Part shown: positions 6,726 to 28,600 of the stretch, one piece after another
Numbering within the stretch: position 1 is the stretch's first letter
How the letters are laid out: each line of letters starts with the position of its first letter
Source of the DNA: Heterodontus francisci
Lineage: Eukaryota
DNA length: 64,000 bases
Assembly: GCF_036365525.1 (NCBI RefSeq)
Contig: NC_090374.1
Coordinates: 13,495,168 to 13,559,167 of the forward strand
Direction: 5' to 3'
The notes under the pieces: generated by a model
What the model was told of the DNA's origin: nothing
The model's database searches: none
What the model saw: the letters and a program-made list of their open reading frames with translations, nothing else
Program-made: the position numbers and the translations under genes

Positions 6726-9700
6726 AAGTACAAGAAAGGGGAACATTGAAAATGATATCAACCCCTTCAGAGCGAGGGTAAGTACAGGAAAGGGGAACAT
6801 TTACCCCGACATCAACCCCTTCAGCATGAGGGTAAGTACAGGAAAGGGGAACATTTACTCCGACATCAACCCCTTCAGCATGAGGGTAAGTACAGGAAAG
6901 GGGAACATTTACTCCGACATCAACCCCTTCTGTGCGAGGGTAAGTACAGGAAAGGGGAACATTTACCCCGAAATCAACCCCTTCAGTATGAGGGTAAGTG
7001 CAGGAAAGGGGAACATTTACCCCGACATCAACCCCTTCAGTGCGGAGGGTAAGTACAGGAAAGGGGAACATTTACCCCGAAATCAACCCCTTCAGTATGA
7101 GGGTAAGTACAGGAAAGGGGAACATTTATCCCAATATCAACCCCTTCAGTATGAGGGTAAGTACAGGAAAGGGGAACATTTACCCCGACATCAACCCCTT
7201 CAGTATGAGGGTAAGTACAGGAAAGGGGAACATTTAGCCCGACATCAACCCCTTCAGCATGAGGGTAAGTACAGGAAAGGGGAACATTTACTCCGACATC
7301 AACCCCTTCAGCATGAGGGTAAGTACAGGAAAGGGGAACATTTACTCCGACATCAACCCCTTCAGCATGAGGGTAAGTGCAGGAAAGGGGAACATTTACC
7401 CCGACATCAACCCCTTCAGTGCGGAGGGTAAGTACAGGAAAGGGGAACATTTACCCCGAAATCAACCCCTTCAGTATGAGGGTAAGTACAGGAAAGGGGA
7501 ACATTTACCCCGACATCAACCCCTTCAGTATGAGGGTAAGTACAGGAAAGGGGAACATTTAGCCCGACATCAACCCCTTCAGCATGAGGGTAAGTACAGG
7601 AAAGGGGAACATTTAGCCCGACATCAACCCCTTCAGCATGAGGGTAAGTACAGGAAAGGGGAACATTTACTCCGACATCAACCCCTTCAGCATGAGGGTA
7701 AGTACAGGAAAGGGGAACATTTACCCCGACATCAACCCCTTCAGTATGAGGGTAAGTACAGGAAAGGGGAACATTTAGCCCGACATCAACCCCTTCAGCA
7801 TGAGGGTAAGTACAGGAAAGGGGAACATTTACTCCGACATCAACCCCTTCTGTGCGAGGGTAAGTACAGGAAAGGGGAACATTTACCCCGACATCAACCC
7901 CTTCAGTGCGGAGGGTAAGTACAGGAAAGGGGAACATTTACCCCGAAATCAACCCCTTCAGTATGAGGGTAAGTACAGGAAAGGGGAACATTTATCTCAA
8001 TATCAACCCCTTCAGTATGAGGGTAAGTACAGGAAAGGGGAACATTTAGCCCGACATCAACCCCTTCAGTGTGAGGGTAAGTACAAGAAAGGGGAACATT
8101 TAAAATGATATCAACCCCTTCAGAGCGAGGGTAAGTACAGGAAAGGGGAACATTTACCCCGACATCAACCCCTTCAGTATGAGGCTAAGTACAGGAAAGG
8201 GGAACAGTTACCCCGACAGCAACCCCTTCAGTGCGAGGGTAAGTACAGGAAAGGAGAACATTTACTCCGACATCAACCCCTTCAGTGCGAGGGTAAGTAC
8301 AGGAAAGGGGAACATTTACCCCGACATCAACCCCTTCAGTATGAGAGTAAGTACATGAAAGGGGAACATTTACCCCAACATCAACCCCTTCAGTCCGGAG
8401 GGGAAGTACAGGAAAGGAGAACATTTACTCCGACATCAACCCCTTCAGTGCGAGGGTAAGTACAGGAAAGGGGAACATTTACACTGACATCAGCCCCTTC
8501 AGTATGAGGGTAAGGACAGGAAGGGGGAACATTTACCCGACATCAACCCCTTCAGGGTAAGTACAGGAAAGGGGAACATTTACCCTGACATCAACCCCTT
8601 CAGTGTGAGGGTAAGTACAGGAAAGGGGAACATTTACCCGACATCAACCCCTTCAGTGCGAGGGTAAGTACAGGAAAGGAGAACATTTACTCCGACATCA
8701 ACCCCTTCAGTGCGAGGGTAAGTACAGGAAAGGGGAACATTTACCCCGACATCAACCCCTTCAGTGCGAGGGTAAGTACAGGAAAGGAGAACATTTACTC
8801 CGACATCAACCCCTTCAGTGCGAGGGTAAGTACAGGAAAGGGGAACATTTACACCGACATCAACCCCTTCAGTATGAGGGTAAGGACAGGAAGGGGGAAC
8901 ATTTACCCCGTCATCAACCCCTTCAGTATGAGGGTAAGTACAGGAAAGGGGAACATTTACCCCGACATCAACCCCTTCAGTGCGAGGGTAAGTACAGGAA
9001 AGGAGAACATTTACTCCGACATCAACCCCTTCAGTGCGAGGGTAAGTACAGGAAAGGGGAACATTTACCCCGACATCTTCCCCTTCAGAGTAAGTACAGG
9101 AAAGGGGAACATTTACTCCGACATCAACCCCTTCAGTGCGAGGGTAAGTACAGGAAAGGAGAACATTTACCCCGACATCAACCCCTTCAGTATGAGGGTA
9201 AGTACAGGAAAGGGGAACATTTACCCCGACATCAACCCCTTCAGCATGAGGGTAAGTACAGGAAAGGGGAACATTTACCCTGACATCAACCCCTTCAGTG
9301 TGAGGGTAAGTACAAGAAAGGGGAACATTGAAAATGATATCAACCCCTTCAGAGCGAGGGTATGTACAGGAAAGGGGAACATTTACCCCGACATCAACCC
9401 CTTCAGCATGAGGGTAAGTACAGGAAAGGGGAACATTTACCCCGACATCAACCCCTTCAGCATGAGGGTAAGTACAGGAAAGGAGAACATTTACTCCGAC
9501 ATCAACCCCTTCAGTGCGAGGGTAAGTACAGGAAAGGAGAACATTTACCCCGACATCAACCCCTTCAGCATGAGGGTAAGTACAGGAAAGGGGAACATTT
9601 ACCCCGACATCAACCCCTTCAGTGTGAGGGTAAGTACAGGAAAGGGGAACATTTACCCCGACATCAACCCGTTCAGTGTGAGGGTAAGTACAGGAAAGGG

Positions 9701-9744
9701 GAACATTTACCCCGACATCAACCCCTTCAGTGTGAGGGTAAGTA

Positions 9745-11031
9745 GAACATAGAACATAGAACATAGAACATACAGCACAGAACAGGCCCTTCGGCCCACA
9801 ATGTTGTGCCGATCCTTTGTCCTCTGTCAAGGACAATTTAATCTATACCCCATCATTCTCCTTTATCCATATACCTATCCAAAAGCCTTTTGAAAGTCCC
9901 TAAAGTTTCTGACTCAACAACTTCCCCGGGCAAGGCATTCCATGCCTCGACCACTCTCTGGGTAAAGAACCTTCCCCTGACATCCCCCTTATATCTCCCA
10001 CCCTTCACCTTAAATTTATGACCCCTTGTAACGCTTTGCTCCACCCGGGGAAAAAGTTTCTGACTGTCTACCCTATCTATTCCCCTGATCATCTTATAAA
10101 CCTCTATCATGTCACCCCTCATCCTTCTCCTTTCTAATGAGAAGAGGCCTAGAATGTTCAGCCTTTCCTCGTAAGACTTATTCTCCATTCCAGGCAACAT
10201 CCTGGTAAATCTCCTCTGCACCCTCTCCAAGGCTTCCACATCCTTCCTAAAATGAGGCGACCAGAACTGCACACAGTACTCCAAATGAGGCCTTACCAAG
10301 GTCCTGTACAGCTGCATCATCACCTCACGGCTCTTAAATTCAATCCCTCTGCTAATGAACGCTAACACCCCATATGCCTTCTTCACAGCCCTATCCACTT
10401 GAGTTGCAACTTTCAATGATCTATGCACATAGACCCCAAGGTCTCTCTGCTCCTCCACATGCCCAAGAACCCTACCGTTAACCCAGTATTTTGCATTCAT
10501 GTTTGTCCTTCCAAAATGGACGACCTCACACTTTTCAGGGTTAAACTCCATCTGCCACTTTTCAGCCCAGCACTGCAACCTATCCAAGTCCCTTTGCAGA
10601 CGACAATAGCCCTCCTCGGTATCCACAACTCCACCAACCTTTGTATCATCTGCAAATTTACTGACCCACCCTTCGACTTCCTCATCCAAGTCGTTAATAA
10701 AAATCACAAACAGGAGAGGACCTAGAACTGATCCCTGCGGCACGCCACTGGTAACTGGGCTCCAGGCTGAGTATTTACCATCTAAGACCACTCTCTGCCT
10801 TCTATCAGTTAGCCAATTCTTAATCCAACTGGCCACATTCCCCACTATCCCATGCCTCCTGACTTTCTCCATAAGTCTACCATGGGGGACCTTATCAAAT
10901 GCCTTACTAAAATCCATGTACACCACATCCACTGGTTTACCCTCATCCACTTGCTTGGTCACCTGCTCAAAGAATTCAATCAGGCTTGTGAGGCAAGACC
11001 TACCCCTCACAAAACCGTGCTGACTGTCCCG
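9745..11031 (-). mobile_element. Second copy of the same truncated CR1 insertion
   Basis: Same length (1287 bp), same junctions, same AAGTA duplication (9740-9744 and 11032-11036), and identical 417-aa translation. Confidence 0.96.
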
Positions 11032-13699
11032 AAGTACAAGAAAGGGGAACATTGAAAATGATATCAACCCCTTCAGAGCGAGGGTAAGTACAGGAAAGGG
11101 GAACATTTACCCCGACATCAACCCCTTCAGCATGAGGGTAAGTACAGGAAAGGGGAACATTTACCCCGACATCAACCCCTTCAGCATGAGGGTAAGTACA
11201 GGAAAGGGGAACATTTACTCCGACATCAACCCCTTCAGCATGAGGGTAAGTACAGGAAAGGGGAACATTTACTCCGACATCAACCCCTTCAGTATGAGGG
11301 TAAGTACAGGAAAGGGGAACATTTACTCCGACATCAACCCCTTCTGTGCGAGGGTAAGTACAGGAAAGGGGAACATTTACCCCGAAATCAACCCCTTCAG
11401 TATGAGGGTAAGTGCAGGAAAGGGGAACATTTACCCCGACATCAACCCCTTCAGTGCGGAGGGTAAGTACAGGAAAGGGGAACATTTACCCCGAAATCAA
11501 CCCCTTCAGTATGAGGGTAAGTACAGGAAAGGGGAACATTTATCCCAATATCAACCCCTTCAGTATGAGGGTAAGTACAGGAAAGGGGAACATTTACCCC
11601 GACATCAACCCCTTCAGTATGAGGGTAAGTACAGGAAAGGGGAACATTTACTCCGACATCAACCCCTTCAGCATGAGGGTAAGTACAGGAAAGGGGAACA
11701 TTTACTCCGACATCAACCCCTTCTGTGCGAGGGTAAGTACAGGAAAGGGGAACATTTACCCCGAAATCAACCCCTTCAGTATGAGGGTAAGTGCAGGAAA
11801 GGGGAACATTTACCCCGACATCAACCCCTTCAGTGCGGAGGGTAAGTACAGGAAAGGGGAACATTTACCCCGAAATCAACCCCTTCAGTATGAGGGTAAG
11901 TACAGGAAAGGGGAACATTTATCTCAATATCAACCCCTTCAGTATGAGGGTAAGTACAGGAAAGGGGAACATTTACCCCGACATCAACCCCTTCAGTGTG
12001 AGGGTAAGTACAAGAAAGGGGAACATTTAAAATGATATCAACCCCTTCAGAGCGAGGGTAAGTACAGGAAAGGGGAACATTTACCCCGACATCAACCCCT
12101 TCAGTATGAGGCTAAGTACAGGAAAGGGGAACAGTTACCCCGACAGCAACCCCTTCAGTGCGAGGGTAAGTACAGGAAAGGAGAACATTTACTCCGACAT
12201 CAACCCCTTCAGTGCGAGGGTAAGTACAGGAAAGGGGAACATTTACCCCGACATCAACCCCTTCAGTGCGAGGGTAAGTACAGGAAAGGGGAACATTTAC
12301 CCCGACATCAACCCCTTCAGTGCGAGGGTAAGTACAGGAAAGGGGAACATTTACCCCGACATCAACCCCTTCAGTATGAGGGTAAGTACAGGAAAGGGGA
12401 ACATTTATCTCAATATCAACCCCTTCAGTATGAGGGTAAGTACAGGAAAGGGGAACATTTAGCCCGACATCAACCCCTTCAGTGTGAGGGTAAGTACAAG
12501 AAAGGGGAACATTTAAAATGATATCAACCCCTTCAGAGCGAGGGTAAGTACAGGAAAGGGGAACATTTACCCCGACATCAACCCCTTCAGTATGAGGGTA
12601 AGTACAGGAAAGGGGAACATTTATCTCAATATCAACCCCTTCAGTATGAGGGTAAGTACAGGAAAGGGGAACATTTACCCCGACAGCAACCCCTTCAGTG
12701 CGAGGGTAAGTACAGGAAAGGAGAACATTTACTCCGACATCAACCCCTTCAGTGCGAGGGTAAGTACAGGAAAGGGGAACATTTACCCCGTCATCAACCC
12801 CTTCAGTATGAGGCTAAGTACAGGAAAGGGGAACAGTTACCCCGACAGCAACCCCTTCAGTGCGAGGGTAAGTACAGGAAAGGAGAACATTTACTCCGAC
12901 ATCAACCCCTTCAGTGCGAGGGTAAGTACAGGAAAGGGGAACATTTACCCCGACATCAACCCCTTCAGTGCGAGGGTAAGTACAGGAAAGGAGAACATTT
13001 ACTCCGACATCAACCCCTTCAGTGCGAGGGTAAGTACAGGAAAGGGGAACATTTACCCCGACATCAACCCCTTCAGTATGAGGGTAAGTACAGGAAATGG
13101 GAACATTTAGCCCGACATCAACCCCTTCAGTATGAGAGTAAGTACATGAAAGGGGAACATTTACCCCAACATCAACCCCTTCAGTCCGGAGGGGAAGTAC
13201 AGGAAAGGGGAACATTTACCCCGACATCAACCCCTTCAGTCCAAGGGTAAGTACAGGAAAGGGGGAACATTTACCCCGACATCAACCCCTTCAGTACGGA
13301 GGGTAAGTACAGGAAAGGGAAACATTTCCCCCAACATCAAACCCTTCAGGGTAAGTACAGGAAAGGGGAACATTTACCCCGACATCAACCCCTTCAGTAC
13401 GGAGGGTAAGTACAGGAAAGGGAAACATTTCCCCCAACATCAAACCCTTCAGGGTAAGTACAGGAAAGGGGAACATTTACCCCAACATCAACCCCTTCAG
13501 TCCGGAGGGGAAGTACAGGAAAGGGGAACATTTACCCCGACATCAACCCCTTCAGTCCAAGGGTAAGTACAGGAAAGGGGGAACATTTACCCCGACATCA
13601 ACCCCTTCAGTACGGAGGGTAAGTACAGGAAAGGGAAACATTTCCCCCAACATCAAACCCATCAGGGTAAGTACAGGAAAGGGGAACATTTTTCCCTTA

Positions 13700-16600
13700 T
13701 TTTCTTCAAGCGCTTCTGTTTATTGGTTATAAATACTTTGGGAGAGATGGGCTGATTGACTGACAGTCAAGAATTATCCTTTGGGGCAATGGAGATTCTG
13801 GTTCCTTTCCGATTGGTGAACAGTGGCACCACTTGAGGATGCACCAATGGTGGGAGCATTGGGATGGAGAGGGGGAGGGGTTTGGAGGTCATGTGATGAG
13901 ACCTCCAGGAATACAGCCGACCAGAGTTGGGGAACCCAATAACAGAGATGAATCACCCGGTCCCAACTGCCTTTGGTTCACACACAGGAGAATGACCTTC
14001 GGAGGCTGATGGAAGAGGAGGAGGGGAGACAATTAAAATAGTATTTTGAAAGGAAAGCAATGACTCACTCTCTTCTGAATCAGCGACTGTGGGTTTCTTG
14101 CTACCTTGAACTGAAGGAGAATGTTCCGTTAGTCGAGAGGCTGAATTTTAAATATGAAAAATATTTTGAACATCGGTTTATAGCCACTTACCTTTTTTGC
14201 TGCTGTCAGTCATTATGCTGGCATAAGTACAGGAATCAGGCTGAGCTGTAAGACAAACAGAATCCACTCTGAAACTGCCTGACTGATTTAACCTCCTCAC
14301 TCTGGAATCATAGAATCTTACAGCACAACATCAACGGGTATTGATATAGCACTTTTAACATAGAAAAAGGTCACAAAACACTTCATAGTAAACAGACTAA
14401 AATTTGGCACTGAGTCACAAAGACGGACATTGGAACAGATGACCAAACACTTGGTCAAACAGGTCGGGTCGGTTTAAGGAGCCACTTAAAAGGAGAGAAG
14501 AGAAGTACAGAGGCGGAGAGGTTTCGAGAGGGAATCCCAGAGCTCAGGGGCCAGGTGGATGAAGGCGCGGCCACCAATAGTGTTACAATGAGAATCAGAG
14601 ATGGGCAAGGGGCCAGAATTGAAGAAGTTCAGAATTCTCGGAGGATTGTAAGGTTAGAGGAGGTTACAGAGATAGGGAGGTGCAAGGCAATGGACAGATT
14701 TGAACACAGAAATAAAAACAAGAAAGTGATGGAAATACTCAGCAGATCTGGCAGAATCTGTGGAGAGAGCAGCAGAGTTAACGTTTCAGGTCTGCGACCC
14801 TTCATCAGTTTTTCCAGTCTCTACAAGTGACTGAAGACTTTCACCCCAGGACCGTTGGAGTAAATCTTCCCTGCACCCTCTCCAGGGGCTTGACATCCTT
14901 CCTAAAGTGTTTGCCACAACACTCCAGCTGGGGCCTTACCAGGGTTTTGTTAAGGTTTAGCATAACTTCCTTGCTTTTATACTCTGTGCCTCTGTTTATA
15001 AAAACACGGATTCTGTATGTCTTTTTAACATCCATCTCAATTAGTCCTTCAAAGACTTGTAAATGCACACTCCCACATCACTCTGTTTATGCAATTCCTT
15101 CAGAATTGTACCATTTAGTTCTCACTGTCTCTTTCACACTTCTCTGCATTCAGTTTCATCTGCCAAATGTCTGTCCATTTCACTGGTCCGTCTATGTTCT
15201 CCTGAGTCTGTTATTATCCTCCTTACGACATTTCAGAGTTTCATGTCATCTGTATACTTTGAAATTATGCCCTGTATGCTCAAGTCCAGGTTATTTAACA
15301 TATAGAGCACTGGTTTCCCCAATATTGTTCACTTCCCTCCTGTCTGAAAAACAACTGCTCAACACGACTCTCTGCTTCTGACCGTCAGCCAATTTCATAA
15401 CCACACAGCCAATAACCCTTTCAGCTCACGAGCTTCAATTTTTCTAACAAATTTATCATGTGATTCTTTATCAAACATCTTTTGAAAGTCCATATACATA
15501 ATATTAACCAGACATGGAATATAAGCAACATGGATACGAAATTGGCTGAGTGACAGGAAACAGAAAGTCGTGGTTAATGGATGTTTCTTGGACTGGAGGA
15601 AGGTTTTTATGAAATTCCCCAGGGGTCAGTGTTAGGACTCTTGCTCTTCCTGATATATATTAATGACCCAGTCATTGGTGTACAGGGCACCATTTCAAAA
15701 TTTGTGGATGATACAAAACTTGGAAACAATGTGATCTTTGAGGAGGATAGTGCAGAACTTCAAAAGGTTGTTGGAATGGGTGATCAAGTGGCAGATGAAA
15801 TTTAATGCAAAGAAGTGTGAAGTGATTCATTTTGGTAGGAAGAACGCAGAGAAACAATATAAAATAAAGGATACAGTTCTAAAGCGGGTGCAGGGGCAGA
15901 GGGACCTGCGTGTATATATTGAAGGTGGTAGGTCAGATTAAGAAAATGGTTTATTAATAGGGGCCTAGAGTACAAAAGCAAGGAAGTTGTATGAAACTTG
16001 TATAGAACACTGCTTCGGTCTCAACTGGAGTATTGTGTCCAATTCTGGATGCCACACTTTAGGAAAGATGTGAAGGCATTAGAAAAAGTGCAGAAAAGAT
16101 TCACAAGAATGGTTCCAGGGATGAGGAACTTCAGTTACGTTGATAGTTTGGAGAAGTTGGGACTGTTTTCCTTGGAGAAAAGAAGGTTGAAAGGAGATTT
16201 GATAGAGGTATTAAAAACCATGAGGTGTCTGGAAAGCGTAGATAGGGAAAAACTGTTCCCATTGGTGGAGGGATCAAGAACAAGAGAGAACAGATTTAAG
16301 GTAATTGGCAAAAGAAGCAATGGTGACATGAAAAACATTTTTATGCAGCAAGTGGTTAGGATCTGGAATACACTGCCTGAGAGGGTGGTGGAGGCAGGTT
16401 CAATCGAGGCATTCAAGAGGGAATTGAATTATAATCTGAAAAGTGAGAATGTGCAGGGCTACAAGGAGAAGGTAGGGAGTGGCCAGTGCAGACATGATGG
16501 GCCGAAAGGCCTCATTCTATGCTGTAACAATTTTGTGATTCCGTGACATCCTTACGGATGAGCCCAGATGTGCTGCTGGGGGCTAATGGGGCAGTGTAGA

Positions 16601-19600
16601 GTCATTGAGTTATACAGCACAGAAACAGGCCCTTCGTGCATTTGTTTCAATGCGAGAAGTATAACAGGTAAGGCAGATGAACTTAGAGCTTGGATTAGTA
16701 CTTGGAACTATGATGTTGTTGCTATTACAGAAACTTGGTTGAGGGAAGGACAGGATTGGCAGCTAAATGTTCCGGGATTTAGAAGCTTCAGGCGGGATAG
16801 AGGGGGATGTAAAAGGGGTGGGGGAGTTGCATTACTGGTTAAGGAGAATATCGCAGCTGTACTGCGGGAGGACACCTCAGAGGGATCATGCAGTGAGGCA
16901 ATATGGGTGGAGCTCAGGAATAGGAAGGGTGCAATCACGATGTTGGGGGTTTACTACAGGCCTCCCAACAGCCAGCAGGAGATAGAGGAGCAGATATGTA
17001 GACAGATTTTGGAAAGATGTAAAAGCAACAGGGTTGTAGTGGTGGGTGATTTTAACTTCCCCTATATTGACTGGAACTCACTTAGTGCTAGGGGCTTGGA
17101 TGGGGCAGAATTTGTAAGGAGCATCCAGGAGGGCTTCTTGTAACAATATGTAGATAGTCCAACTAGGGAAGGGGCCATACTGGACCTGGTATTGGGGAAT
17201 GAGCCCAGCCAGGTAGTCAAAGTTTCAGTAGGGGAGCATTTCGGGAACAGTGATCATAATTCCGTAGGTTTTAAGGTACTTGTGGATAAGGATAAGAGTA
17301 GTCCTCGGGTGAAGGTGCTAAATTGGTGGAAGGCTAATTATAACAATATTAGGCAGAAACTGAAGAATTTAGATTGGAGGCGGCTGTTTGAGGGTAAATC
17401 AACATCTGACATGTGGGAGTCTTTCAAACGTCAGTTGATTAGAATCCAGGACCAGCATGTTCCTGTGAGGAAGAAGGATAAGTTTGGCAAGTTTCGGGAA
17501 TCTTGGATAACGCAAGATATTGTGAGCCTAGTCAAAAGGAAAAAGGAAGCATTCGTAAGGGCTGGAAGGCGAGGAACAGACGAAGCCCTTAAGTAATATA
17601 AAGACAGTAGGAAGGGACTTAAGCAAGGAGTCAGGAGGGCTAAAAGGGGTCATGAAAAGTCATTGGCAAACAGGATTAAGGAAATTCCCAAGGCGTTTTA
17701 TACGTATATAAAGAGCAAGAGGGTAACCAGGGAAAGGGTTGGCCCACTCAAGGACAGAGAAGGGAATGTGTGGAGCCAGAGGAAATGGGCGAGGTACTAA
17801 ATGAGTACTTTGCATCAGAATTCACCAAAGAGAAGGACTGGGTGGATGATGAGTCTAGGGAAGGGAGTGTAGATAGTCTCGGTCATGTCTTTATCAAAAA
17901 GGAGGAGGTGTTGGGCATCTTGCAAAGCATTAAGGTAGATAAGTCCCCAGGGCCTGATGGGATCTACCCCAGAATACTGAGGGAGGCAAGGGAAGAAATT
18001 GCTGGGGCCTTGACAGAAATCTTTGTATCCTCATTGGCTACAGGTGAGGTCCCAGAGGACTGGAGAATAGCCAATGTTGTTCCTTTGTTTAAGAAGGGTA
18101 GCAAGGATAATCCAGGAAATTATAGGCCGGTGAGCCTTACATCAGTGGTAGGGAAATTATTAGAGAGGATTCTTCGGGACAGGATTTACTCCCATTTGGA
18201 AACAAACGAACTTATTAGCGAGAGGCAGCATGGTTTTGTGAAGGGGAGGTTGTGTCTCACGAACTTGATTGAGTTTTTTGAGGAAGTGATGAAGATGAAG
18301 GAAGGGCAGTGGATGTTATCTATATGGACTTCAGTAATCTGTATGGACTTCAGACAAGGTCCCTCATGGCAGACTGGTACAAAAGGTGAAGTCACACGGG
18401 AGCAGAGGTGAGCTATCAAGATGGATACAGAACTGGCTCGGTCATAGAAGACAGAGGGTAGCAGTGGAAGGGTGCTTTTCTGAATGGAGGGATGTGACTA
18501 GTGGTATTCCGCAGGGATCAGTGCTGGGACCTTTGCTGTTTGTAGTATATATAAATGATTTGGAGGAAAATGTAGCTGGTCTGATTAGTAAGTTTGCGGA
18601 CGACACAAAGGTTGGTGGAGTTGCGGATAGTGATGAGGATTGTCGGAGGATACAGCAGGATATAAATCGGTTGGAGACTTGGGTGGAGAAATGGCAGATG
18701 GAGTTTAATCCGGACAAATGTGAGGTAATGCATTTTGGAAGGTCTAATGCAGGTGGGACGTATACAGTAAATGGCAGAACCCTTAGGAGTATTGACAGGC
18801 AGAGAAATCTGGGCGTATAGGTCCACAGGTCACTGAAAGTGGCAACGCAGGTGGATAAGGTAGTCAAGAAGGCATACGACATGCTTGCCTTCATCGGTCG
18901 GGGCATAGAGTATAAAAATTGGCAAGTCATGCTGCAGCTGTACAGAACTTTAGTTAGGCCACACTTAGAATATTGCGTGCAATTCTGGTCGCCGCACTAC
19001 CAGAAGGATGTGGAGGCTTTGGAGAGGGTACAGAAGAGGTTTACCAGGATGTTGCCTGGTCTGGAGGGCATTAGCTATGAGGAGAGGTTGGATAAACTCG
19101 GATTGTTTTCACTGGAACGACGGAGGTGGAGGGGCGACATGATAGAGGTTTACAAAGTTATGAGCGGCATGGACAGAGTGGACAGTCAGAAGCTTTTTCC
19201 CAGTTTGGAACAGTCAGTTACTAGGGGACATAGGTTTAAGGTGAGAGGGACAAAGTTTAGAGGGGATGTGCGAGGCAAGTTCTTTACACAGAGGGTGGTG
19301 AGTGCCTGGAACCTGCTGCCGGGGGAGGTGGTGGAAGCAGGTACGATAGCGACATTTAAGAGGCATCATGACAAATACATAAATAGGATGGGAATAGAGG
19401 GATACGGTCCCTGGAAGTGCAGAAGGTTTTAGTTTAGGCAGGCATCAAGATCGGCGCAGGCTTGGAGGGCCGAATGGCTTGTTCCTGTGCTGTACTGTTC
19501 TTTGTTCAAAGGCGACTAACAGCCCAGTCCTCTGGGCAAGATCGATCCGGTTCCGGACCTGGTGGATGTTGTCCTGGATGGACCGGCTCGGGACTGTGTA

Positions 19601-22600
19601 GGAATGGTCAGGTTGGATCATGTGGGCCAGCACGGAGCCCAGGCGGGTAGACAACGCCCGGGCAAAGATCTTATAATCCGTGCTGAGGACTGAGAAATTG
19701 TGAAATCTGCAGTGAGACCTGCTGCTGCCGTTGATGTTGAGGCTGGCTATGGTTATCTTCATGTCAAAGGTACTTAAAGACCGTCACCAATACCTCACTG
19801 TGAGGCAGCAGCAGACGTGCACCTGGCTTTCCACTCTCCCATTGAGGAACGCATTAAATCGGTGCCTCTCAACCAGTTTCACACCCGTGCCCTTCCTCTC
19901 TTTCTTGAGGGTGGCACGGACAGACTGAATGATCAGCGCCAGATTTGACCAACGGCCGAGGGCCAGCTGAACTTTAGTGCAGCACCCCTTGCAAGCCACG
20001 AGGAAATCCTGGAGTTCCTCTGTGGGGATGAGAGGAGACTCGGTGGGAGGCACGAGGGACTCCACCACCTCACTGGCGATGGAATCAAGATCGTCCTCCG
20101 TGCCCTACACTGAGTCCCCAGCCTCTTCCGGGTCGTCACTGCCAGTGGCCAACACACCCATCACACACTGTGGGGCGGACATCCCAGCCACGCCAGCTGG
20201 TCCCACCTCCGTCACGATCCCACCCCCAGGATCGATGGCGGAGGAGTCTTCTCTGGGTTCTCGTGTGGAACTGGAGCCTTTGGGCGCCAGCGGCTCAGGA
20301 CCCCCCTACACCTCCGTCCCCAGGCCAATGAGGGGAGATGGAAATTCCCAACTTCAGAAATTCAACCAGAGCCGAGACCAGAGGTGGAGAGACGAGGTCA
20401 TCTCCTGCCCCATCAGCACCCACAGGCCCAGCAGATGGGGCAGCACTTTCAGTTATAACTGGGTCGTGTATGTCCTGGTCCAGAGTGGATTTTGGCTGGG
20501 AGGTCCGACATTTTAGGGCCTCGCCCTCCCCTCCATTTAGGGCACCTGACCCAGTGGCAGAATAGGAGGCGTCCCCAGGCTCCCCTACCACAAGTAGAGC
20601 TCCACTTGCACCAACAGGAGGGGCATTATGTACAGGAGCCTCCACCTCCCCTCTATCCTGAGGGGTAGGGAGCTGCTGCCCAGACTTTTCAGCCTTGATG
20701 TTGGTGGTGATGGGGGGAACCTGGGGACCCGAAATAGGAGACAGCTTCCCTCCAACAGACGGGCCCTGCGGTGCAGGGCCCTGTGATACCTCTGTGGAGG
20801 GGTGCCTTCTCCTCTTTTTCCCACTTGGGCGTGGAGGCTCAGAGACCTCCATGTCATCAGAGGCCTCCGCCTCCTCCATTTTTTTTAGCTACCCTGGGCC
20901 TGAGCCCAGCCCTGGGGAAGGTGGGTTCCCGAGGAACGGGCCTTAGGCTGAGCTCAGGCTCGGGTTGTGTCATGGTGTCCAGGGGACGCGCCTCATAGTG
21001 TTTATTTTTGCTCAGCACCTTCCTTCCACTCGGACAGGCACCCCCCTCCCTGCCGGAGGCCGTGAAGACCACAGCCTCCGGTACTGACTGAGCAGTGTCT
21101 GTAGGGGTAGGGGGAGTGGGAGGAGATGCTGTGGCGCCACCCTGGGCTGCCGAGGTGGAGTTGGCAGCTGGGAGGTTGGGATAGTTCTTACGAACATGCC
21201 CCAGCCCCTTGCAGACATGGTACCGCGTCCCATCCAAAGTCCAGAAGGCGCAGTAGGCTGTTCCCTGGAACTCCACATTGAAGTGGCCCTCCAAGACCTC
21301 CTCCCTAACCAGCTGCATAAATATCTGATGGCAGAAGGAGTACACATGCCGGAGGCTGTTTTCCCGAAGACCAAGCGGGACTGGGGTAAGCCCTGACTTC
21401 ACCTCCCCCAGATGGTGCATGTGGGGGAGGAGCAGCTCACTGGGAATGAAGGGTGGGACATTAGACAACATTATCCACTGCGCAGTGGCCCCCAGAGGGT
21501 CCACCGGCAGGGAGGTCCCCCGCACAGTGAGCCCCTTACTCAGGGCCAGAGACGCCGCCCGCTCGGTCTTCAGGAAGAACACAGCCTTCCCGTACATCTT
21601 CGAGCTGCAACAACAGACGAGGGGCCGACAACCTTGGCCATCACCTTTATGCAAGCCTCAGTAGACATGTTGGGGTGGGCACTGCTCTTTACCCCATGAC
21701 CAGAAGTGAGCAGCTTGAATGGTGATGGGGCCACATGGGTGGCTGCAGAGACTGCAGCCGCATAGGTGTTAGAGGGCCCCGCCACCGGCACAGATGGACT
21801 TGCCATGGGTCAAGAGCTAAACCCCACCCCAATTGTAGGCCTACAGATTTCAAATAAAGCAAGCAAATTAGTAAATAAATGTATAATAAGTTAGGGGAGA
21901 GGCAGAGGGATACTGAAGAGGAAAAGAGAGGCTGGGAGTGCTGACTTGTTTTACCAAAGTGGTATGACAGATAACAGTTCAATCAAGCAGTCCTTCACAA
22001 GTTCTTCTGGTCTTCCAGTTGGGGAGAGGTGTCTTCACCTGGGTCAGCCGAAAACTGCCCACGCACTTTCTGTCTTCTGCTTTCTTCTTAGCCAGGCAGC
22101 TTCAGCTGACCCAGGCTGGGCAATCGGGGTGGGGGGAGGGAGCTTCCTTGTATATTTAGTGCAACTGCACAGCTCCCTGCAGAATTGTGCAGCCCCTACC
22201 CCTTGTTCTTCCGGCCTCTCCAACCTCTCCCAACAGTCCAAATAAATATAAGTTTGGTGCTCAACACCCACCTCGAAATACAGACGTATTCCAAAGTCTT
22301 TCCTCTGCAGCAAAAGTTGTTTGAAAGTTTTTGCAGTTCTCTCCTCAGCACTCCCTCTCCAGCAACACCTCCAGCAACTGACTGCAGAACTGTCAGCTTC
22401 ACCTCGTTGAGGCACTCAGCACTCAGGCTTCCCAATCAGAGAGGAGCCAACCGCGTTTTTTTTCTTTTTTTTTTATAAGGTGGCCTTTATACCGCAGGCC
22501 CCATTTACGTATTTTATGTCGAGGGGGCCTTTATTTTCCAGGCCCTCTTTATATACATTTTATAAAAATAACTTTTTTTGAAAAACAGATAAATAAAACA

Positions 22601-25600
22601 AAACTCACAGTGGCACAGTGGTTAGCACCACAGCTCCAGCGACCCGGGTTCAATTCTGGGTACTGCCTGTGTGGAGTTTGCAAGTTCTCCCTGTGTCTGC
22701 GTGGGTTTCCTCCCACATGCCAAAGACTTGCAGGTTGATAGGTAAATTGGCCATTAGCAATTGCCCCTAGTATAGGTAGGTGGTAGGGAAATATAGGGAC
22801 AGGTGGGGATGTGGTAGGAATATGGAATTAGTGTAGGATTAGTATAAATGGGTGGTTGATGGTCGGCACAGACTCGGTGGGCCGAAGGGCCTGTTTCAGT
22901 GCTGTATCTCTAAACTAAACTAAAATGCCATTTTCGCGTCAATTATGTGCTCCAGTCCCTGCGGTGCCCACCTGTCACAGAAGGCCTCAAGCGTATCGAC
23001 GGACACCACATGCTCCTTCTCCAGGGACACCTGGGCGCGAACATAACCTCAGAAGAGGGGCAAGCAATCAGGGAGGGCGGACCCCCTAGATGGCCCACAG
23101 CCTGGACCAATGAGTTGCCATCTTGGCCAGGCCCAGGAGCAGACCGACGAGGAGATCCTCCTCCCAGCCCACGCCCCCTCCGCACCAGGTGCCCAAAGAT
23201 CAGGAGCGTGGGGCTGAAGTGCAATCCAGACCTGAGGAGCAACCCCTTCAAATACTCAAACAGGGGCTGCAACCTCGCACACTCCATATACACGTGGAAC
23301 ACAGACTCGTCCAGGCCGCAGAAATTACAGGCGGCCTGGGAGTCCGTGAACCTACTTAAAAGTCTATTGCATGGGACAGCCCTGTGCAACACCCTCCACC
23401 CCAGGTCCCCGATGTAAAGGGGGAAGAATCCCACGTAGAGAGACCTCCACCGGGGTTTCCCCTTGCCGCCAGATGGCAACACGGACTGCCAGGGCATGTC
23501 CAGCTGGCTGTCAAGGGCAAGGAAGTGGAGAGTGTGCAGGAGCAGCCTGTAGAGGAAACCCCTCCGCGCCAACTGGAATGGCATTTCCCCAGCCAACTCC
23601 GTGCTGTACCTGTCCTGGGAGTGTTTGATGGGACGGTGTAGAGGGAGCTTTACTCTGTATCTATTCCGGTGCTGCACCTGCCTGGGATTGTTTGATAGAA
23701 CAGTGTAAAAATGTTCGATTCCCCAGCATTATCATCTCTCCAATTGACAAAAATTCATCACAACTCCAAGCTAATGAGAGCAGTGTAGCTTCTCCATTTC
23801 CCCGATCATGGTGATGTGACACAGGACATGGTGCTGGCCAGGATCCACAATATGAAGCAGCTCCTGTTGAGACAGTTCATGGTCACTCAAACCTGAACTG
23901 GGAGTTCTCATTTGGGATAACTTTCTGACGATGGGACCGGCATGAACCCTGAGAGTTGACCAGTCTGTCATTGCAGCAGCAAACACTCCCTGGTCTGGTT
24001 ACCATACCCATGGATACATCAATCCTGAAGGACATGGGGAGGGAGTGGGATAGATTTGAAACAAATGTCTTGTATATATAAATGGAGATATTCACTCACG
24101 GTCTTCTGAAGCACTGATTGTGAATCTCTTGCCAACTTTAACCAAAACAAGAAGTTCTGTTAGTTGGAGGATGAAATCTGAATATAAAATAAATAACAGC
24201 TCTAAACCATTAAGGTGCAGCTGCGTACCTGTTCGGTTGGTATCAATCTCGGCGTAGGTGCAGGAATCGTCTTGTGCTGTAAGACAAACAGGAGTGAAAT
24301 AGTGTCATTCGTCCGACATATTTGTCCTTTGGTGTCAGCCGTGCCTCAGTGAACGACACACTCGCCTCAGAGTCTAAAGGTTGTTGGTTCAAATCCCCAC
24401 TCGGGAGACCTGAACACAAAATCTAGGCTGATACTTCAGTAAAGTACATAGGGGACAGTAGTGTAGTGGCAATGTTACTGGACATATCCAGGGGACTGGA
24501 CTAATGCTCAGGAGACATGAGTTCAAATCCCAACACGGCAGCTGGTGGAATTTAAATTCAGTTAGTTAAAAAAACTGGAATAAAAAGTAGTGATAATCAT
24601 GAAACTATCGCATTGTCATAAAAACCCATCTGGTTCATAAACATCATTTAGGGAAGGAAATCTGCTGTCCTTACTCAGTCTGGCCTGCATGTGACTCCAG
24701 ATCCACAGCAATGTGGTTGACTCTTAACTGCCCTCTGAAACGATCTGGCAAGCTACTCAGTTCTATCTAAGGGCAACTATGTGGGCATGAAAGCTGAGCT
24801 AGTTGAAGTGAACTGGGTTACTAGGCTTGGAGATAGATCAATAGAGAAGCAGAGGCAGATATTTAACAGCATGTTTCAGAATACTCAGAATAAGTATATT
24901 ACGACTCTAAAGAAAAATTCTAAGGGGAGGACCCACCATCCGTGGTTAAGGAAAGCATCAAACTTAAGGAAAAAGCATATAATTGTGCAAAGATGAGTGG
25001 CGGTTCAGATGATTGGTCAGAATATAAAGAATGGCAGTGAATGACGAAAAGGTTAATCAGGAGAAAGAAATTAGAGTATGAGAGGAAGCTAACTAGAATG
25101 TAAAAATGGATAGCAAGAGTTCCTACAGGTATTTAAAAAAGAAAAGAATAAGTAAAGACCTTCTCGAGAGTGAGAATGGGGAGCTTATAGTTGATAATAA
25201 GGAAATGGCACATGAAATAAGCAAACATTTTGCTTCTGTCTTCTATAGACGATACAAAACACATTCCAGTAATAGCTGTCAATCAGGAGGTGGAGGAAAG
25301 AGAGGAACTTGGTGAAATTACAATCACTAGGGAAGCGGTACTGAGCAAACTGATGGTGCTGCGGACTGACAAGTCCCCGGGTCCTGATGGACTTCATCCT
25401 AGGGTCTTACAAGAGGTGGCTAATGAGGTAGTAGATGTGTTGGCGTTAATTTTTCAAAATTCACTAGATTCTGGTAAGGTTCCATCAGCCTGGAAAATAG
25501 CAAATATAACTCCTCTATTCAAGAAGGGGGGCGGTGGTGGCAGAAAACAGGTAACTACAGGCGAGTTAGCTTGACATCTATTGTGGGGAAGGTGTTCGAA

Positions 25601-28600
25601 TCAATCATTAAGATGGTTATAGCTGGGCACTTAGAAAAACCCAAGGTAATCGGGAATAGTCAGCATGGTTTTATGAAAGGGAAATCATGTTTAACCAATT
25701 TATTGGAGTTCTTTGAAGGAGTGACACTTGCTGTGGATAAAGGGGAGCCTGTTGACATACTGTACTTGGATTTCCAGAAGGCATTTGACAAGGTGCCACA
25801 GAAAAGGTCATTGTGCAAAGTAGGAGCTCATGGTGTAGGGGGTAACATATCAGCACAGGTAGAAGATTGGCTGGCTGACAGAAAACAGACAGTATGCATA
25901 AATGGATGTGACGAATGGAGTCCCGCAGGGGTCTGTGCTGGAACCTCAACTTTTTAAAATATATATCAATGACTAAGATGAAGAAAGCGATGACATGGTA
26001 GCTAAATTTGCAGATGACACAGAGATAGGTAGGAAAGTATGTTGTGATGAGGACATGAGGAGGTTGCAGACCAATATAGATAGGTTGAGTGAGCGGGCAA
26101 AAATCTGGCAGATGGATGGGAAAATGTGAAGTTGTTCACTTTGGCAGGAAGAATAAAAAAGCAGAGTATTACTTAAACAGAGAACGATTGAAGAATTCCG
26201 AAGTGCAGAGGGAGCTAGATGTTCTAGTGCATGAGTCACAAAAAGTTAGTAAACAGGTACAGCAAGTCATAAAGAAGGCTAATGGAATGCTATCCTTTAT
26301 TATAAGAGGAATTGAAAATAAAAGTAAGGATGTTATGCTTCAGTTATACAGGGCATTGGTGAGACCATATCTCGAATACAGTGTGCAGTTTTGGTCTCCT
26401 TATTGAAGGAAGGATGTAAATGCATTGGAGGCAATTCAGAGGAGGTTTACTAGATTGATATCTGGAATGAGCGGGTTGTCTTATGAGGAAAGGTTGGACA
26501 GACTGGGCTTGTTTTCACTGGAGTTTAGAAGAATTAGGGGAGACTTGATTGAAGTTTATAAGATTCTGAACGGTCTTGATAAGGTGGCTGTGGAAAGGAT
26601 GTTTCCTCTTGTGGGTGAGTCCAGAACTAGGGGGCACTGTTTTAAAATTAGGGGTCGCCCTTTTAGGACAGAGATGAGGAGAAATTTTTTCTTTGGAACT
26701 CTCTGCCTCAGAAGATGGTGGAGGAGGGATCATTGAATAATTTTAAGGTGGAGGTAGATAGATTCTTGTTAGGCAAGGGAATCGAGGGTTATCGGGGTAA
26801 ATGGGAATGTGGAATTTGAAACACAAACATATCAGCCATGATCTATTGAATGACGGAGCAGGCTCGAAGGGCCGAATGGCCTACTTCTACTCCTAATTCA
26901 TATGTTCGTATGCTACAGAAGTGTCAAATAAGAATAAAATATGGGCAAGGAAACCTTGGCAGGGGGAGCAGGACAGATTTGAAAGAATTATTTTTAATAT
27001 ATAAATGGAGATATTCACTCACGATCTTCTGAAGCACTGATTGTGAATCTCTTGTCATCTTTCATCTAAAGTTCTGTTAATTGGAGGACAGTGCCTGAAT
27101 ACAAAATAGACAACAGCTCTAAACCATTAAGGTGCAGCCATGTACCTGTTCTATTGCTGTCAAGCTCGGCGTAGGTGCAGGAATCGTCTTGAGCTGTAAG
27201 ACAAACAGGTGTAAACGGGGCCATTCGTCCACATATTTGTCCTTAGGTGTCAGCCATGCCTCAGTGAACAGTGCTAATTGCCATCTACTGCCTCCCTCAA
27301 CTGATGAATCAGTGCTCCGCCATTTTGAACACCACTTGGAAGATGCACTGAGGATAGCAAGGACACAGATGCCTTTATCCATGACAGTATTGGTAGGAGT
27401 GACCACCTCACAGCCTTGTGCAGACAAACCCATCTTCACACTGACAACAATTCCATCGTGTTGTGTGGAACTTCCACCGTGATAAATGGGATAGATTCAG
27501 AACAGATCCAGCAGCTCAAAACTGGGCATCTGTTCAACCACAATCTGTAAACTCATCGCCCGGCATATCCCTCACTCTACCATTACCAACAAGCCAGGGG
27601 ACCAACCCTGGTGCAATGAGGAATCTAGACAAGCCTGCCAGGAGCAGCACCAGGCATACTAACAAAAAAGATGATTTTGTAGAATATTTCTGGGAGGGTT
27701 TCTGGAGCAAGGGATGAAACTATCTTAAATCTAATACTGTGTAATGAAGTGTAGTTAATTAGTAATGTCATAGTAAAAGATCCACTGGGAAATAGTGATC
27801 ATAATACCATTAAATTTCATGTTACGTTTCAGCTGACATACTCCAACCACAAACAAGAATCTTAAACAAAGCCAATTCGGTAGGTATGAGGGGAGAACTA
27901 GCTAAGGTAAATTGGGTAAATGGACTAAAAGGTTTCGTGGTAAATGAACAGTGGGAAACCATTAAAGAAACAATTCAAAATGTTTAACAAAAATACTTTT
28001 AATTGGAAAACAAAAACTCAGCCAGAAAGACCCATCCGTAGCTCACTCAGGAAGTTAAGGATAGTATTCAATTAAAAGAAGAGGCTTACAATGAAGCAGC
28101 AAAGTAGTATGTCTGAGGATTGGGAGTGTTTTATAAACCAGCAAAGGGCCACCAAAAAGTTAATAAAAGAGGAAAAAATAGAATGAGAGTAAACTAGCCA
28201 GTAATATTAAAAAAAGCAGATTGTAAGAGCTTTTATAGGTATATATAAAGGAAGAGAGTAGCTAAAGTAAACATTGGTACTTTAGAAGCAGAGAAAGGGG
28301 AAATTATCATGGGGACTGAGGAAATGGCAGAGGCATTGAACAAATATTTTGTGTCTGTCTTCACAGTAGAAGACACAAGTTCCATACCAGAAATAGACAG
28401 TAACTTCGGGGCTAAAAGGAGTGAGGAAATGAAGGAAATTCATATCAGCAGACAAAATGTATTGGAGAAACTTAAAGGACAAAAATCTGACAAATCCCCA
28501 GGACCTCTTGGCCTATACCCTAGGGTTCTAAAAGAGACAGCTGCAGAAATAGTGGGTGCATTAGCTATGATTTTCCAGAATTCCTTAGATTCGGGAACAG

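What the first reader, a model, noticed from the sequence alone, without database searches (positions are those of the whole stretch)
13953..27275. Triplicated cytoplasmic-tail exon cassette giving modular tyrosine motifs
Seen: three homologous blocks (13953-14245, 23999-24276, ~26950-27193). Each has exon A with the identical acceptor ctgtttgtcttacag and SCTYASI / SCTYAEI / SCTYAEL, then exon B with a GTGAGT donor; two have a terminal exon. No Ig exons lie between them and the A exons are phase 1-1. Inference: one receptor can carry one to three YxxL/I motifs, or alternative C-termini, by splicing. The Cys at Y-2 makes these ITIM-like rather than canonical ITIMs.
Basis: partly seen in the sequence, partly recalled or inferred. 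Interest (0 to 1): 0.8.

Follow-up and report, generated by a model that had tools for sequence, protein, structure and literature searches.

The report
Shark receptor tail: duplicated tyrosine-motif exons
The three repeated blocks are real, transcribed mini-exons in the tail of one horn-shark Siglec-15-like inhibitory receptor gene; because each keeps the reading frame, splicing can give the tail from two to four tyrosine docking motifs. This design is already known from receptors such as PECAM-1, and the isoforms are already in RefSeq.

Summary
On the minus strand there are three homologous A+B mini-exon pairs: A3/B3 at 27193-27023, A2/B2 at 24276-24100 and A1/B1 at 14245-14069. All three A exons have the same 15-base acceptor and all three B exons have GTGAGT donors. 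Every exon is a multiple of three bases in phase 1-1. Only retrotransposon debris lies between the pairs.

They belong to one Heterodontus francisci gene: a Siglec-15-like V domain, a second V domain, an uncharged TM and a tail. RefSeq isoforms X1-X7 carry A1 alone, A2+A1 or A3+A2+A1, with or without B2. RNA contigs show the junctions 43611 exon->A3, A3->A2 and A2->B2.

- The "terminal exons" inside the blocks are in no horn-shark model. The real last exon, a canonical ITIM (VIYAAV), lies beyond the window's left edge, past a 13.7-kb satellite.
- B3 is probably dead: its pyrimidine tract is deleted, it is in no isoform and no contig covers it.
- A-B and A'-B' form an old pair shared by sharks. 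Only block 3 is a young copy of block 2 (about 84-88% identity).

Catshark and rays duplicated the other cassette independently. Cys at Y-2 is a conserved family trait. Phosphatase (SHP) recruitment is inferred, not shown. I rate it a new member of a known kind, of moderate interest.

The parts
27146..27193 (-). Exon A3 (48 nt, phase 1-1), encodes ..QDDSCTYAELDSNRT; young duplicate of A2
   Evidence: Peptide located; splice sites. RNA contig joint 24276->27146 in runs X1-X3, and a loose end at 27196 matching the 3' end of exon 43611-43672. Present in RefSeq X1, X2, X7.
27023..27058 (-). B3 (36 nt), open frame DDKRFTISASED with GTGAGT donor; probably an unused pseudo-exon
   Evidence: Located. 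There is a 6-nt deletion in the pyrimidine tract before its acceptor relative to B2. It is in no RefSeq isoform and has no contig depth (bins 26916-27147).
24229..24276 (-). Exon A2 (48 nt, phase 1-1), encodes ..QDDSCTYAEIDTNRT
   Evidence: joints to A3 and to B2; present in RefSeq X1, X2, X3, X5, X7.
24100..24135 (-). Exon B2 (36 nt, phase 1-1), VGKRFTISASED; optional 12-residue spacer
   Evidence: Joint 24135->24229 (skips 93, CT..AC) in run X3. Present in X1, X3, X7 and absent in X2, X5.
14192..14245 (-). Exon A1 (54 nt, phase 1-1), ..QPDSCTYASIMTDSSKK; the ancient A' type, in every isoform
   Evidence: present in all RefSeq isoforms. It has the strongest donor (gtaagt) of the three A exons.
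14069..14110 (-). Exon B1 (42 nt, phase 1-1), VQGSKKPTVADSEE; in every isoform
13953..14068 (-).
   Evidence: Translation. It resembles the C-terminus of Chiloscyllium punctatum RefSeq isoform X4 (score 51 against shuffles 26±5.4; 3 of 2000 shuffles reach it). It is in no horn-shark model.
23999..24025 (-).
   Evidence: Read from the sequence. No isoform contains it. No contig depth: bin 23900-24015 is zero, and the depth in bin 24016-24131 is fully accounted for by B2.
43611..43672 (-). Tail exon KDTGSSSIAGTDQTHQQSAP (62 nt, phase 2 to 1), which feeds the first A exon
   Evidence: Its 3' end is the loose end attached to A3 in run X1.
46905..46944 (-). Juxtamembrane exon GCSWLIGCIRCTK (40 nt, phase 1 to 2)
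   Evidence: It resolves the frame between the TM exon and exon 43611-43672.
48563..48676 (-). Transmembrane exon (uncharged span, ends ..FRKKG)
51120..51470 (-). Second V-set exon (approximate ends)
   Evidence: Pfam V-set E 7e-16; peptide located.
60430..60812 (-). First V-set exon, Siglec-15-like (approximate ends)
   Evidence: Pfam V-set. Best solved relative is Siglec-15 7zoz_A, E 9e-17, with the CRVE arginine aligned.
24340..26960 (.). SINE/LINE insertions separating blocks 2 and 3
   Evidence: RVT_1 hit at 25478-25954; ORFs. Homology between the blocks stops at 24345 and 26964.
14300..23950 (.). Retroelement debris separating blocks 1 and 2
   Evidence: Exo_endo_phos, RVT_1 and zf-RVT hits; ORFs.
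1..13691 (.). 54-bp satellite (253 copies, with embedded LINE copies) filling the last intron as far as the window's edge
   Evidence: TRF result. The terminal exon is not found in the window.

Best explanation
The three blocks are tandemly duplicated pairs of cytoplasmic mini-exons of a single minus-strand horn-shark gene. The gene encodes a Siglec-15-like V domain, a second V domain, an uncharged TM and a tyrosine-motif tail.

Shown:
- Every tail exon after exon 43611-43672 is phase 1-1 and a multiple of three bases, so any subset stays in frame.
- A3, A2 and B2 are cassette exons. A1, B1 and a distal terminal exon outside the window are in every RefSeq model.
- The resulting tails have two, three or four tyrosine motifs: CTYAEL, CTYAEI, CTYASI and the terminal canonical ITIM VIYAAV.
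- Neighbouring tyrosines are 16 residues apart without a B exon and 28 residues apart with one.
- The A-B and A'-B' pair is ancestral to sharks. Block 3 is a later local duplication of block 2; its A exon stayed in use and its B exon lost its acceptor tract.

Inferred:
- Once phosphorylated, the motifs recruit tandem-SH2 phosphatases (SHP-1/SHP-2).
- Cassette choice tunes the valency and spacing of the docking sites, and hence inhibitory strength.
For: Gene and isoforms:
- RefSeq proteins 99-100% identical to the window's V exon carry the exon peptides in the combinations A3-A2-B2-A1-B1-T, A3-A2-A1-B1-T, A2-B2-A1-B1-T, A2-A1-B1-T and A1-B1-T.
- Each exon peptide maps to the window.

RNA:
- Contigs of four runs from one sample give GT..AG joints for A3->A2 (three runs) and A2->B2 (one run).
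- A contig also runs from A3 into exon 43611-43672. No mismatches are listed in the A2 or A3 exons.

Exon arithmetic and splice sites:
- A2 and A3 have weak donors (gtacgc, gtacat) against gtaagt for A1, and the B2 acceptor is weak. This fits optional versus constitutive use.

Selection on the young copy:
- A2 and A3 differ at 6 of 48 nt: 4 synonymous and 2 conservative changes (I/L at Y+3, T/S).

Family conservation:
- The A-B-A'-B'-T order recurs in Chiloscyllium, Hemiscyllium, Stegostoma and Mustelus. Scyliorhinus has it with a second A'-B' copy. Rhincodon and Pristiophorus models show parts of it.
- Predicted isoforms that skip A or B exist in Mustelus, Rhincodon and Stegostoma.
- Independent duplications of the A'-B' cassette are seen in Scyliorhinus canicula and in the rays Hemitrygon and Hypanus.

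Fit to SHP binding:
- A at pY+1 and I/L/V at pY+3 fit the published SHP SH2 preferences, and sharks keep the SHP binding sites (PMC12151841).
- PECAM-1 is a precedent: loss of one cytoplasmic exon abolishes SHP-2 binding (PMC5664058).
Against: - The isoform set comes from automatic Gnomon models. Only three junctions were seen directly, in contigs from a single sample.
- Contigs cannot give isoform proportions. Junctions into A1 and into the terminal exon could not be examined.
- A paralogue with near-identical A2/B2 exons is expressed in the same runs (the 'CCA' joint), so some mapping ambiguity remains for A2-B2.
- Blocks 2 and 3 are no more conserved in exons than in introns (0.875-0.92 against 0.83-0.90). 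Selection on A3 therefore rests on a 4:2 substitution pattern, p about 0.05 by my own binomial estimate.
- Cys at pY-2 is outside the ITIM and ITSM consensus and outside the SHP-2 N-SH2 preference (I/L/V) quoted.
- No binding or phosphorylation data exist.
Confidence: 0.8

Rival explanations
1. Only the ancestral exons matter. A3, and perhaps A2, is included as splicing noise from a recent duplication and is on its way to decay, as B3 already is.
For: Exon identity between blocks 2 and 3 is no higher than intron identity. B3 has already lost its pyrimidine tract and is unused. A3 is seen only in this one gene among about 75 family proteins.
Against: - A3 keeps its frame, tyrosine, acceptor 15-mer and donor.
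- Its substitutions against A2 are 4 synonymous to 2 conservative.
- The A3-A2 junction appears in contigs of three runs, at a depth similar to the paralogue's A2-B2 contig.
- A2-type exons are conserved across shark orders.
Confidence: 0.15
2. The CxYAx(I/L) motifs are not inhibitory docking sites. They would be YxxΦ endocytosis or sorting signals, or docking sites for Src-family, Csk or other SH2 proteins, and only the terminal VIYAAV would be the ITIM.
For: Cys at pY-2 misses the ITIM and ITSM consensus and the SHP-2 N-SH2 preference. YxxΦ fits AP-2 sorting signals, and acidic residues upstream with Y-A-E-I recall Src-family SH2 ligands (my own knowledge, not tested).
Against: A at +1 and I/L at +3 are the SHP C-SH2 preferences. 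The 28-residue spacing between motifs is in the range I recall for bidentate SHP ligands such as PD-1 and PECAM-1. One Hemiscyllium paralogue has the canonical L at -2 in the same motif (SLTYASI), and the orectolobiform A motif SSPYAEI has S at -2.
Confidence: 0.2
3. The blocks are left-over 3' ends of three separate duplicated receptor genes whose Ig exons were lost, not parts of one gene.
For: Each block has an A exon, a B exon and a short ORF ending in a stop. The blocks are separated by 3-10 kb of transposons.
Against: Spliced contigs join the upstream tail exon to A3 and A3 to A2. RefSeq isoforms string all three together. The in-block 'terminal exons' are unused. All exons share phase 1-1.
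Confidence: 0.03

Closest known systems
PECAM-1 (CD31) cytoplasmic domain
   Same: The tail is encoded by several short, alternatively spliced exons. Dropping one exon (exon 14) removes an ITIM tyrosine and abolishes SHP-2 binding (PMC5664058). The logic is the same as for A3/A2/B2 here.
   Different: The PECAM-1 exons are not recent tandem duplicates of one another, its ectodomain has six Ig domains, and its ITIMs are canonical. Here the cassettes are paralogous A+B pairs with Cys at pY-2.
CD33-related Siglec inhibitory tails (membrane-proximal ITIM ..YASL.. plus distal ITIM-like ..YSEV..)
   Same: A sialic-acid-lectin-type V domain is joined to a tail with a proximal YAS(I/L) motif and a C-terminal YxxV motif. 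This resemblance is recalled from memory and was not tested. CD33 is the next-best solved relative of the V domain after Siglec-15.
   Different: The V domain is closest to Siglec-15 (E 9e-17 against 6e-6 for CD33). There are extra upstream YAE(I/L) exons, Cys at pY-2, and a V-V rather than V-C2 ectodomain.
Siglec-15
   Same: It is the best solved match of the first V domain, with the CRVE arginine aligned. RefSeq names some paralogues 'sialic acid-binding Ig-like lectin 15'.
   Different: By my own knowledge, Siglec-15 is an activating, DAP12-coupled receptor with a lysine in its TM and no tyrosine-motif tail. This gene has an uncharged TM and a tail with up to four tyrosines.
SIRPα / PZR-type multi-tyrosine SHP-2 docking tails
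   Same: Several Y-A-x-(I/L/V) motifs in one tail that recruit tandem-SH2 phosphatases (from memory, not tested here).
   Different: In those receptors the number of motifs is fixed, as far as I know. Here it varies by cassette splicing and by lineage-specific exon duplication.

Membership tests
ITIM, (S/I/V/L)xYxx(I/V/L) | S, I, V or L at pY-2 | tested here: not met
   A1, A2 and A3 all have Cys at -2. Consensus as quoted in PMC12151841. The terminal exon motif VIYAAV, outside the window and read from RefSeq proteins, does meet it.
ITIM, (S/I/V/L)xYxx(I/V/L) | I, V or L at pY+3 | tested here: met
   YASI, YAEI and YAEL.
ITSM, TxYxx(V/I) | Thr at pY-2 | tested here: not met
   Cys at -2; Thr is at -1 (consensus).
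ITAM, YxxL/I-x6-8-YxxL/I | Two YxxL/I motifs 10-12 residues apart | tested here: not met
   Tyr-to-Tyr spacing in the RefSeq tails is 16 residues without a B exon and 28 with one (counted).
Alternatively spliced modular cytoplasmic exons (PECAM-1 type) | Symmetric-phase short exons, so that any subset stays in frame | tested here: met
   Exons of 54, 48, 48, 42, 36 and 36 nt, all phase 1-1.
Alternatively spliced modular cytoplasmic exons (PECAM-1 type) | Transcripts with different exon subsets | tested here: met
   RefSeq isoforms X1-X7; A3->A2 and A2->B2 junctions in RNA contigs. Skipping junctions were not directly seen.
Alternatively spliced modular cytoplasmic exons (PECAM-1 type) | Exon choice changes SHP phosphatase recruitment | not testable with these tools
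   Needs phosphopeptide binding or a cell assay.
Siglec-15 orthologue | Siglec-15-type V domain with the conserved arginine | tested here: met
   7zoz_A E 9e-17; CRVE aligned.
Siglec-15 orthologue | Charged (Lys) TM for DAP12 pairing and no inhibitory tail | tested here: not met
   The TM exon encodes an uncharged span, and the tail has up to four tyrosine motifs. The defining feature itself is recalled from memory.

The most novel reading that the evidence does not exclude
Elasmobranch Siglec-15-like inhibitory receptors may use a distinct, conserved docking motif, (D/S)-C-x-Y-A-x-(I/L/V). The motif is carried on a duplicable A+B exon cassette. Lineages (horn shark, catshark, rays) would repeatedly change cassette copy number, and cells would change cassette inclusion, to set both the number of motifs (2-4) and their spacing (16 or 28 residues) for tandem-SH2 phosphatases. 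The invariant Cys at pY-2 would add a further layer, such as redox or acylation control of docking.
Probability: 0.15. Interest if true: 0.6.

Novelty: new member of a known kind. Interest (0 to 1): 0.4.

Why it matters
It gives a clean, datable example of exon-pair duplication combined with symmetric intron phase turning a fixed inhibitory tail into an adjustable one. The example sits in a shark receptor family (a Siglec-15-like lectin domain with an inhibitory tail) that two literature searches found undescribed. The recurrent, independent duplications in horn shark, catshark and rays suggest selection on the number of docking motifs. The conserved Cys at pY-2 is a testable deviation from the ITIM rule. 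However, the gene models and isoforms are already public in RefSeq, and the principle is established for PECAM-1 and similar receptors.

Tried and rejected
1. The look-up of encoding contigs was tried to fetch the paralogous horn-shark loci and the loci of other species, in order to count cassettes in genomic DNA. Copy number elsewhere therefore rests on predicted proteins only.

2. BLASTP of the B1 read-through ORF against the C. punctatum X4 protein found nothing because the query is short and compositionally adjusted. A Smith-Waterman alignment with shuffles did show similarity.

3. A word search of the scan's notes for this cassette returned nothing.

4. Literature searches for shark Siglec-15 and for ITIM receptors of cartilaginous fish found no paper on this family. 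A search for exon duplication with ITIM tails found nothing relevant.

5. A search with the tail of the longest RefSeq isoform found only the same V-set family, so there is no sign that the cassette was shuffled onto other ectodomains.

6. ITAM and ITSM readings were rejected on spacing and on the pY-2 residue.

7. The 'three gene relics' reading was rejected on the spliced contigs.

8. I did not build or search any joined spliced model of my own. Exons were translated and located one by one and compared with proteins the tools returned.

10. The large HMMER search and structure prediction were not used. The tail is short and likely disordered, and the family was already clear.
Full report
**1. 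What is in the sequence**

The feature lies on the minus strand. The 15-mer ctgtttgtcttacag occurs exactly three times in the window, ending at 14246, 24277 and 27194.

A degenerate pattern for the core of the following exon (GAYTCCTGYACYTAYGCC) hits those three places exactly. Chance expectation is 0.32 matches with up to 3 mismatches, and 0 of 100 shuffles reach the observed 4.

BLASTN of each block against the window gives these identities:
- Block 2 (24041-24345) against block 3 (26964-27260): about 84% over about 300 bp.
- Block 1 against block 2: 65% over 205 bp, E about 1e-6.

The three-way alignment and the splice-site listing define two mini-exons per block.

| Exon | Coordinates | Length (nt) |
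|---|---|---|
| A3 | 27193-27146 | 48 |
| B3 | 27058-27023 | 36 |
| A2 | 24276-24229 | 48 |
| B2 | 24135-24100 | 36 |
| A1 | 14245-14192 | 54 |
| B1 | 14110-14069 | 42 |

- Every length is a multiple of three, and every exon starts and ends in intron phase 1.
- All three B exons have GTGAGT donors.
- The A exons encode ..SCTYAEL....SCTYAEI.. and ..SCTYASI...
- Between the blocks I found only retroelement fragments: RVT_1, Exo_endo_phos and zf-RVT hits.

**2. Which gene they belong to**

Upstream on the same strand lie these exons:
- Two V-set exons at about 60.4-60.8 kb and 51.1-51.5 kb (Pfam V-set).
- An uncharged transmembrane exon at 48676-48563.
- A 40-nt juxtamembrane exon at 46944-46905.
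- A 62-nt tail exon at 43672-43611.

The first V domain is closest to human Siglec-15 among solved structures (7zoz_A, E 9e-17, with the CRVE arginine aligned). CD33 and Siglec-8 follow at about 1e-5.

A word search with the V1 open frame returned Heterodontus francisci RefSeq proteins that are 99-100% identical. Their cluster holds isoforms X1-X7, XP_067885252 to XP_067885260.

My searches agree with that.

**3. How the cassettes are used**

Each exon peptide found in the window can be read in the RefSeq tails.

| Isoform | Tail exons after exon 43611-43672 |
|---|---|
| X1 | A3-A2-B2-A1-B1-T |
| X7 (lacks the second V domain) | A3-A2-B2-A1-B1-T |
| X2 | A3-A2-A1-B1-T |
| X3 | A2-B2-A1-B1-T |
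| X5 | A2-A1-B1-T |
| X6 | A1-B1-T |

- T is a terminal exon encoding ..NVIYAAVVTTR. It is not present anywhere in the window. It must lie beyond coordinate 1, on the far side of the 54-bp satellite that fills 1-13691.
- The split codons predicted from the genomic exon ends match the junction residues in these proteins: G+CT or G+CA gives Ala, G+TT gives Val, and C+CT gives Pro (read by eye).
The comparison was exon by exon against proteins that the tool returned.

**4. Direct RNA evidence**

Four runs from one sample (coded X1-X4) hold the V1 exon. I laid their contigs on 23900-27350. The results were:
- A joint 24276->27146 skipping 2869 bases with CT..AC ends (GT..AG on the gene strand) in X1, X2 and X3. 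This is A3 spliced to A2.
- A joint 24135->24229 skipping 93 bases in X3. This is A2 spliced to B2.
- A loose end behind 27196 in X1 whose 23 letters are the reverse complement of the 3' end of exon 43611-43672. This is that exon spliced to A3.
- No mismatches listed inside A2 or A3, so these contigs fit this gene.
- A second, deeper A2-B2-like joint with 'CCA' between the sides. It corresponds to the paralogue whose protein reads ..NRTGWKRF.. (P0007). A paralogue is therefore co-expressed and must be kept in mind.
The small value in bin 27032-27147 equals two bases of A3, and the value in bin 24016-24131 equals the 31 letters of B2.

Contigs show presence, not absence or abundance. Only one read-laying run was allowed, so junctions into A1, exon-skipping junctions and the region after B1 were not examined.

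**5. Why some exons are optional and B3 is silent** (inference from sequence)

- A1 has a consensus-like donor (AG|gtaagt) and B1 has a good acceptor (ctccttcag).
- A2 and A3 have weak donors (gtacgc, gtacat), and B2 has a weak acceptor (..ttttggttaaag). This fits constitutive A1/B1 and optional A2/A3/B2.
- B3 differs from B2 by a 6-nt deletion that removes most of the pyrimidine tract in front of its acceptor. This is a sufficient reason for its absence from all models and contigs, although its frame and donor are intact.

**6. History**

Block 2 and block 3 identity by segment is as follows.

| Segment | Identity |
|---|---|
| Upstream intron | 0.90 |
| A exon | 0.875 |
| A-B intron | 0.86 |
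| B exon | 0.92 |
| Downstream | 0.83 |

- This marks one duplication of a unit of at least 300 bp. The copies were later pushed apart by SINE/LINE insertions; homology stops at 24345 and 26964.
- In the A exon, 4 of 6 differences are synonymous and 2 are conservative (I/L at Y+3, T/S). This is weak evidence of constraint (about p 0.05 by my binomial estimate, assuming about 73% non-synonymous sites).
- In B3, 2 of 3 differences are radical.

The deeper pair is old. The order A(..YAEI..)-B(..KRFT.S.SE.)-A'(..PDSCTYASI..)-B'-T(..V.YAAV..) recurs in predicted proteins of Chiloscyllium, Hemiscyllium, Stegostoma and Mustelus. Scyliorhinus has it with a second A'-B' copy, and the Rhincodon and Pristiophorus models show parts of it. 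Rays have A'-type exons and T.

Only this horn-shark gene shows two consecutive YAE(I/L) exons. However:
- Scyliorhinus canicula isoform X3 carries two nearly identical A'-B' cassettes.
- Hemitrygon and Hypanus proteins carry two A'-type cassettes, with an isoform lacking one.

Cassette duplication is therefore recurrent in this family. Predicted isoforms that skip A (Mustelus X3, Rhincodon X4) or B (Stegostoma) show the same modular use elsewhere. All of these are automatic models.

**7. The motifs**

- Cys at pY-2 is not peculiar to this gene. DSCTYAS(I/L/V), DSCTYATI, DPCTYANI and DFCTYASI dominate the A' exons across sharks and rays.
- SCTYA(E/D)I occurs in the A exons of Heterodontus, Scyliorhinus, Mustelus and Pristiophorus. 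Orectolobiform sharks have S, I or F there instead.
- By the consensus definitions quoted in PMC12151841 (ITIM (S/I/V/L)xYxx(I/V/L); ITSM TxYxx(V/I)), the A motifs are neither ITIM nor ITSM. The terminal VIYAAV is a canonical ITIM.
- The same paper summarises peptide-library work: SHP-2 C-SH2 favours Ala at +1 and Ile at +3, Ala at +1 promotes SHP-1 recruitment, and the SHP binding sites are conserved in sharks. The A motifs fit at +1 and +3.
- Counted on the RefSeq tails, neighbouring tyrosines are 16 residues apart when A exons abut and 28 apart when a B exon intervenes. A1 to T is also 28.
- An ITAM (10-12 apart) is excluded.

The inference is that the tail is a variable-valency, variable-spacing docking platform for tandem-SH2 phosphatases. 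PECAM-1 is the precedent: it has eight alternatively spliced cytoplasmic exons, and loss of exon 14 abolishes SHP-2 binding (PMC5664058). Binding itself is untested here.

**8.

- The block-2 ORF (23999-~24025) has no support.
- That translation resembles the C-terminus of a Chiloscyllium punctatum RefSeq isoform (X4) that reads through the homologous donor and stops at the same relative place. The score is 51 against 26±5.4 for shuffles, and 3 of 2000 shuffles reach it.
- This may be a conserved alternative end lacking the terminal ITIM, or only slowly evolving intron. No horn-shark model has it, and I could not lay reads there.

**9. Verdict**

The finding is real and its main interpretation is right. 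It is a further example of a known design, and the models are already in RefSeq. Two literature searches found no paper on this shark family.

Noticed in passing
window 1-13691 (and A1 exon 14192-14245): A 54-bp satellite (253 copies, 78% matches) fills the last intron up to the window's edge. Its unit length equals that of the A1 exon (54 nt). In the gene's orientation it shares TTCCTGTACTTA and more with A1: local score 14 against 7.0±1.2 for shuffles, 0 of 1000 reaching it. This was noticed post hoc. Another note of this scan (s1-872915) reports an intron satellite built from an exon copy in this genome. The array could have been seeded by an A-type exon, or the match could be chance.
   Followed up: partly
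window 5550-6800 and 9856-11106: Two identical 417-aa reverse-transcriptase ORFs (RVT_1, E 1e-27) sit about 4.3 kb apart inside the satellite, each with the same flanking ORFs. The array therefore contains a recent higher-order duplication that includes a LINE insertion.
   Followed up: no
window 46905-46944: A 40-nt juxtamembrane exon (GCSWLIGCIRCTK, phase 1 to 2) lies between the TM exon and exon 43611-43672. It removes the 'frame conflict after the TM exon' raised in note s1-872627; no premature stop or frame-switch is needed.
   Followed up: yes
window 24130-24227 (joint with CCA between): The same RNA runs hold a deeper contig from a paralogue (RefSeq XP_067885261-63..NRTGWKRF..) whose A2/B2-type exons are at least 95% identical to the window's. 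Read mapping to these mini-exons needs care.
   Followed up: partly
window 24136-24228 and 27059-27145 (A-B introns): The A-B intron is open in frame in block 2. Its start translates as GTQLHLNGLELL (block 2) and GTWLHLNGLELL (block 3), which resembles the read-through C-terminus DKWLHLNGFELLLN of a whale-shark RefSeq isoform (P0032). This intron sequence is therefore conserved between shark orders.
   Followed up: no
RefSeq isoform X7 (P0003): One predicted isoform skips the whole second V-set exon (about 51.1-51.5 kb), giving a single-V receptor with the full four-tyrosine tail.
   Followed up: no
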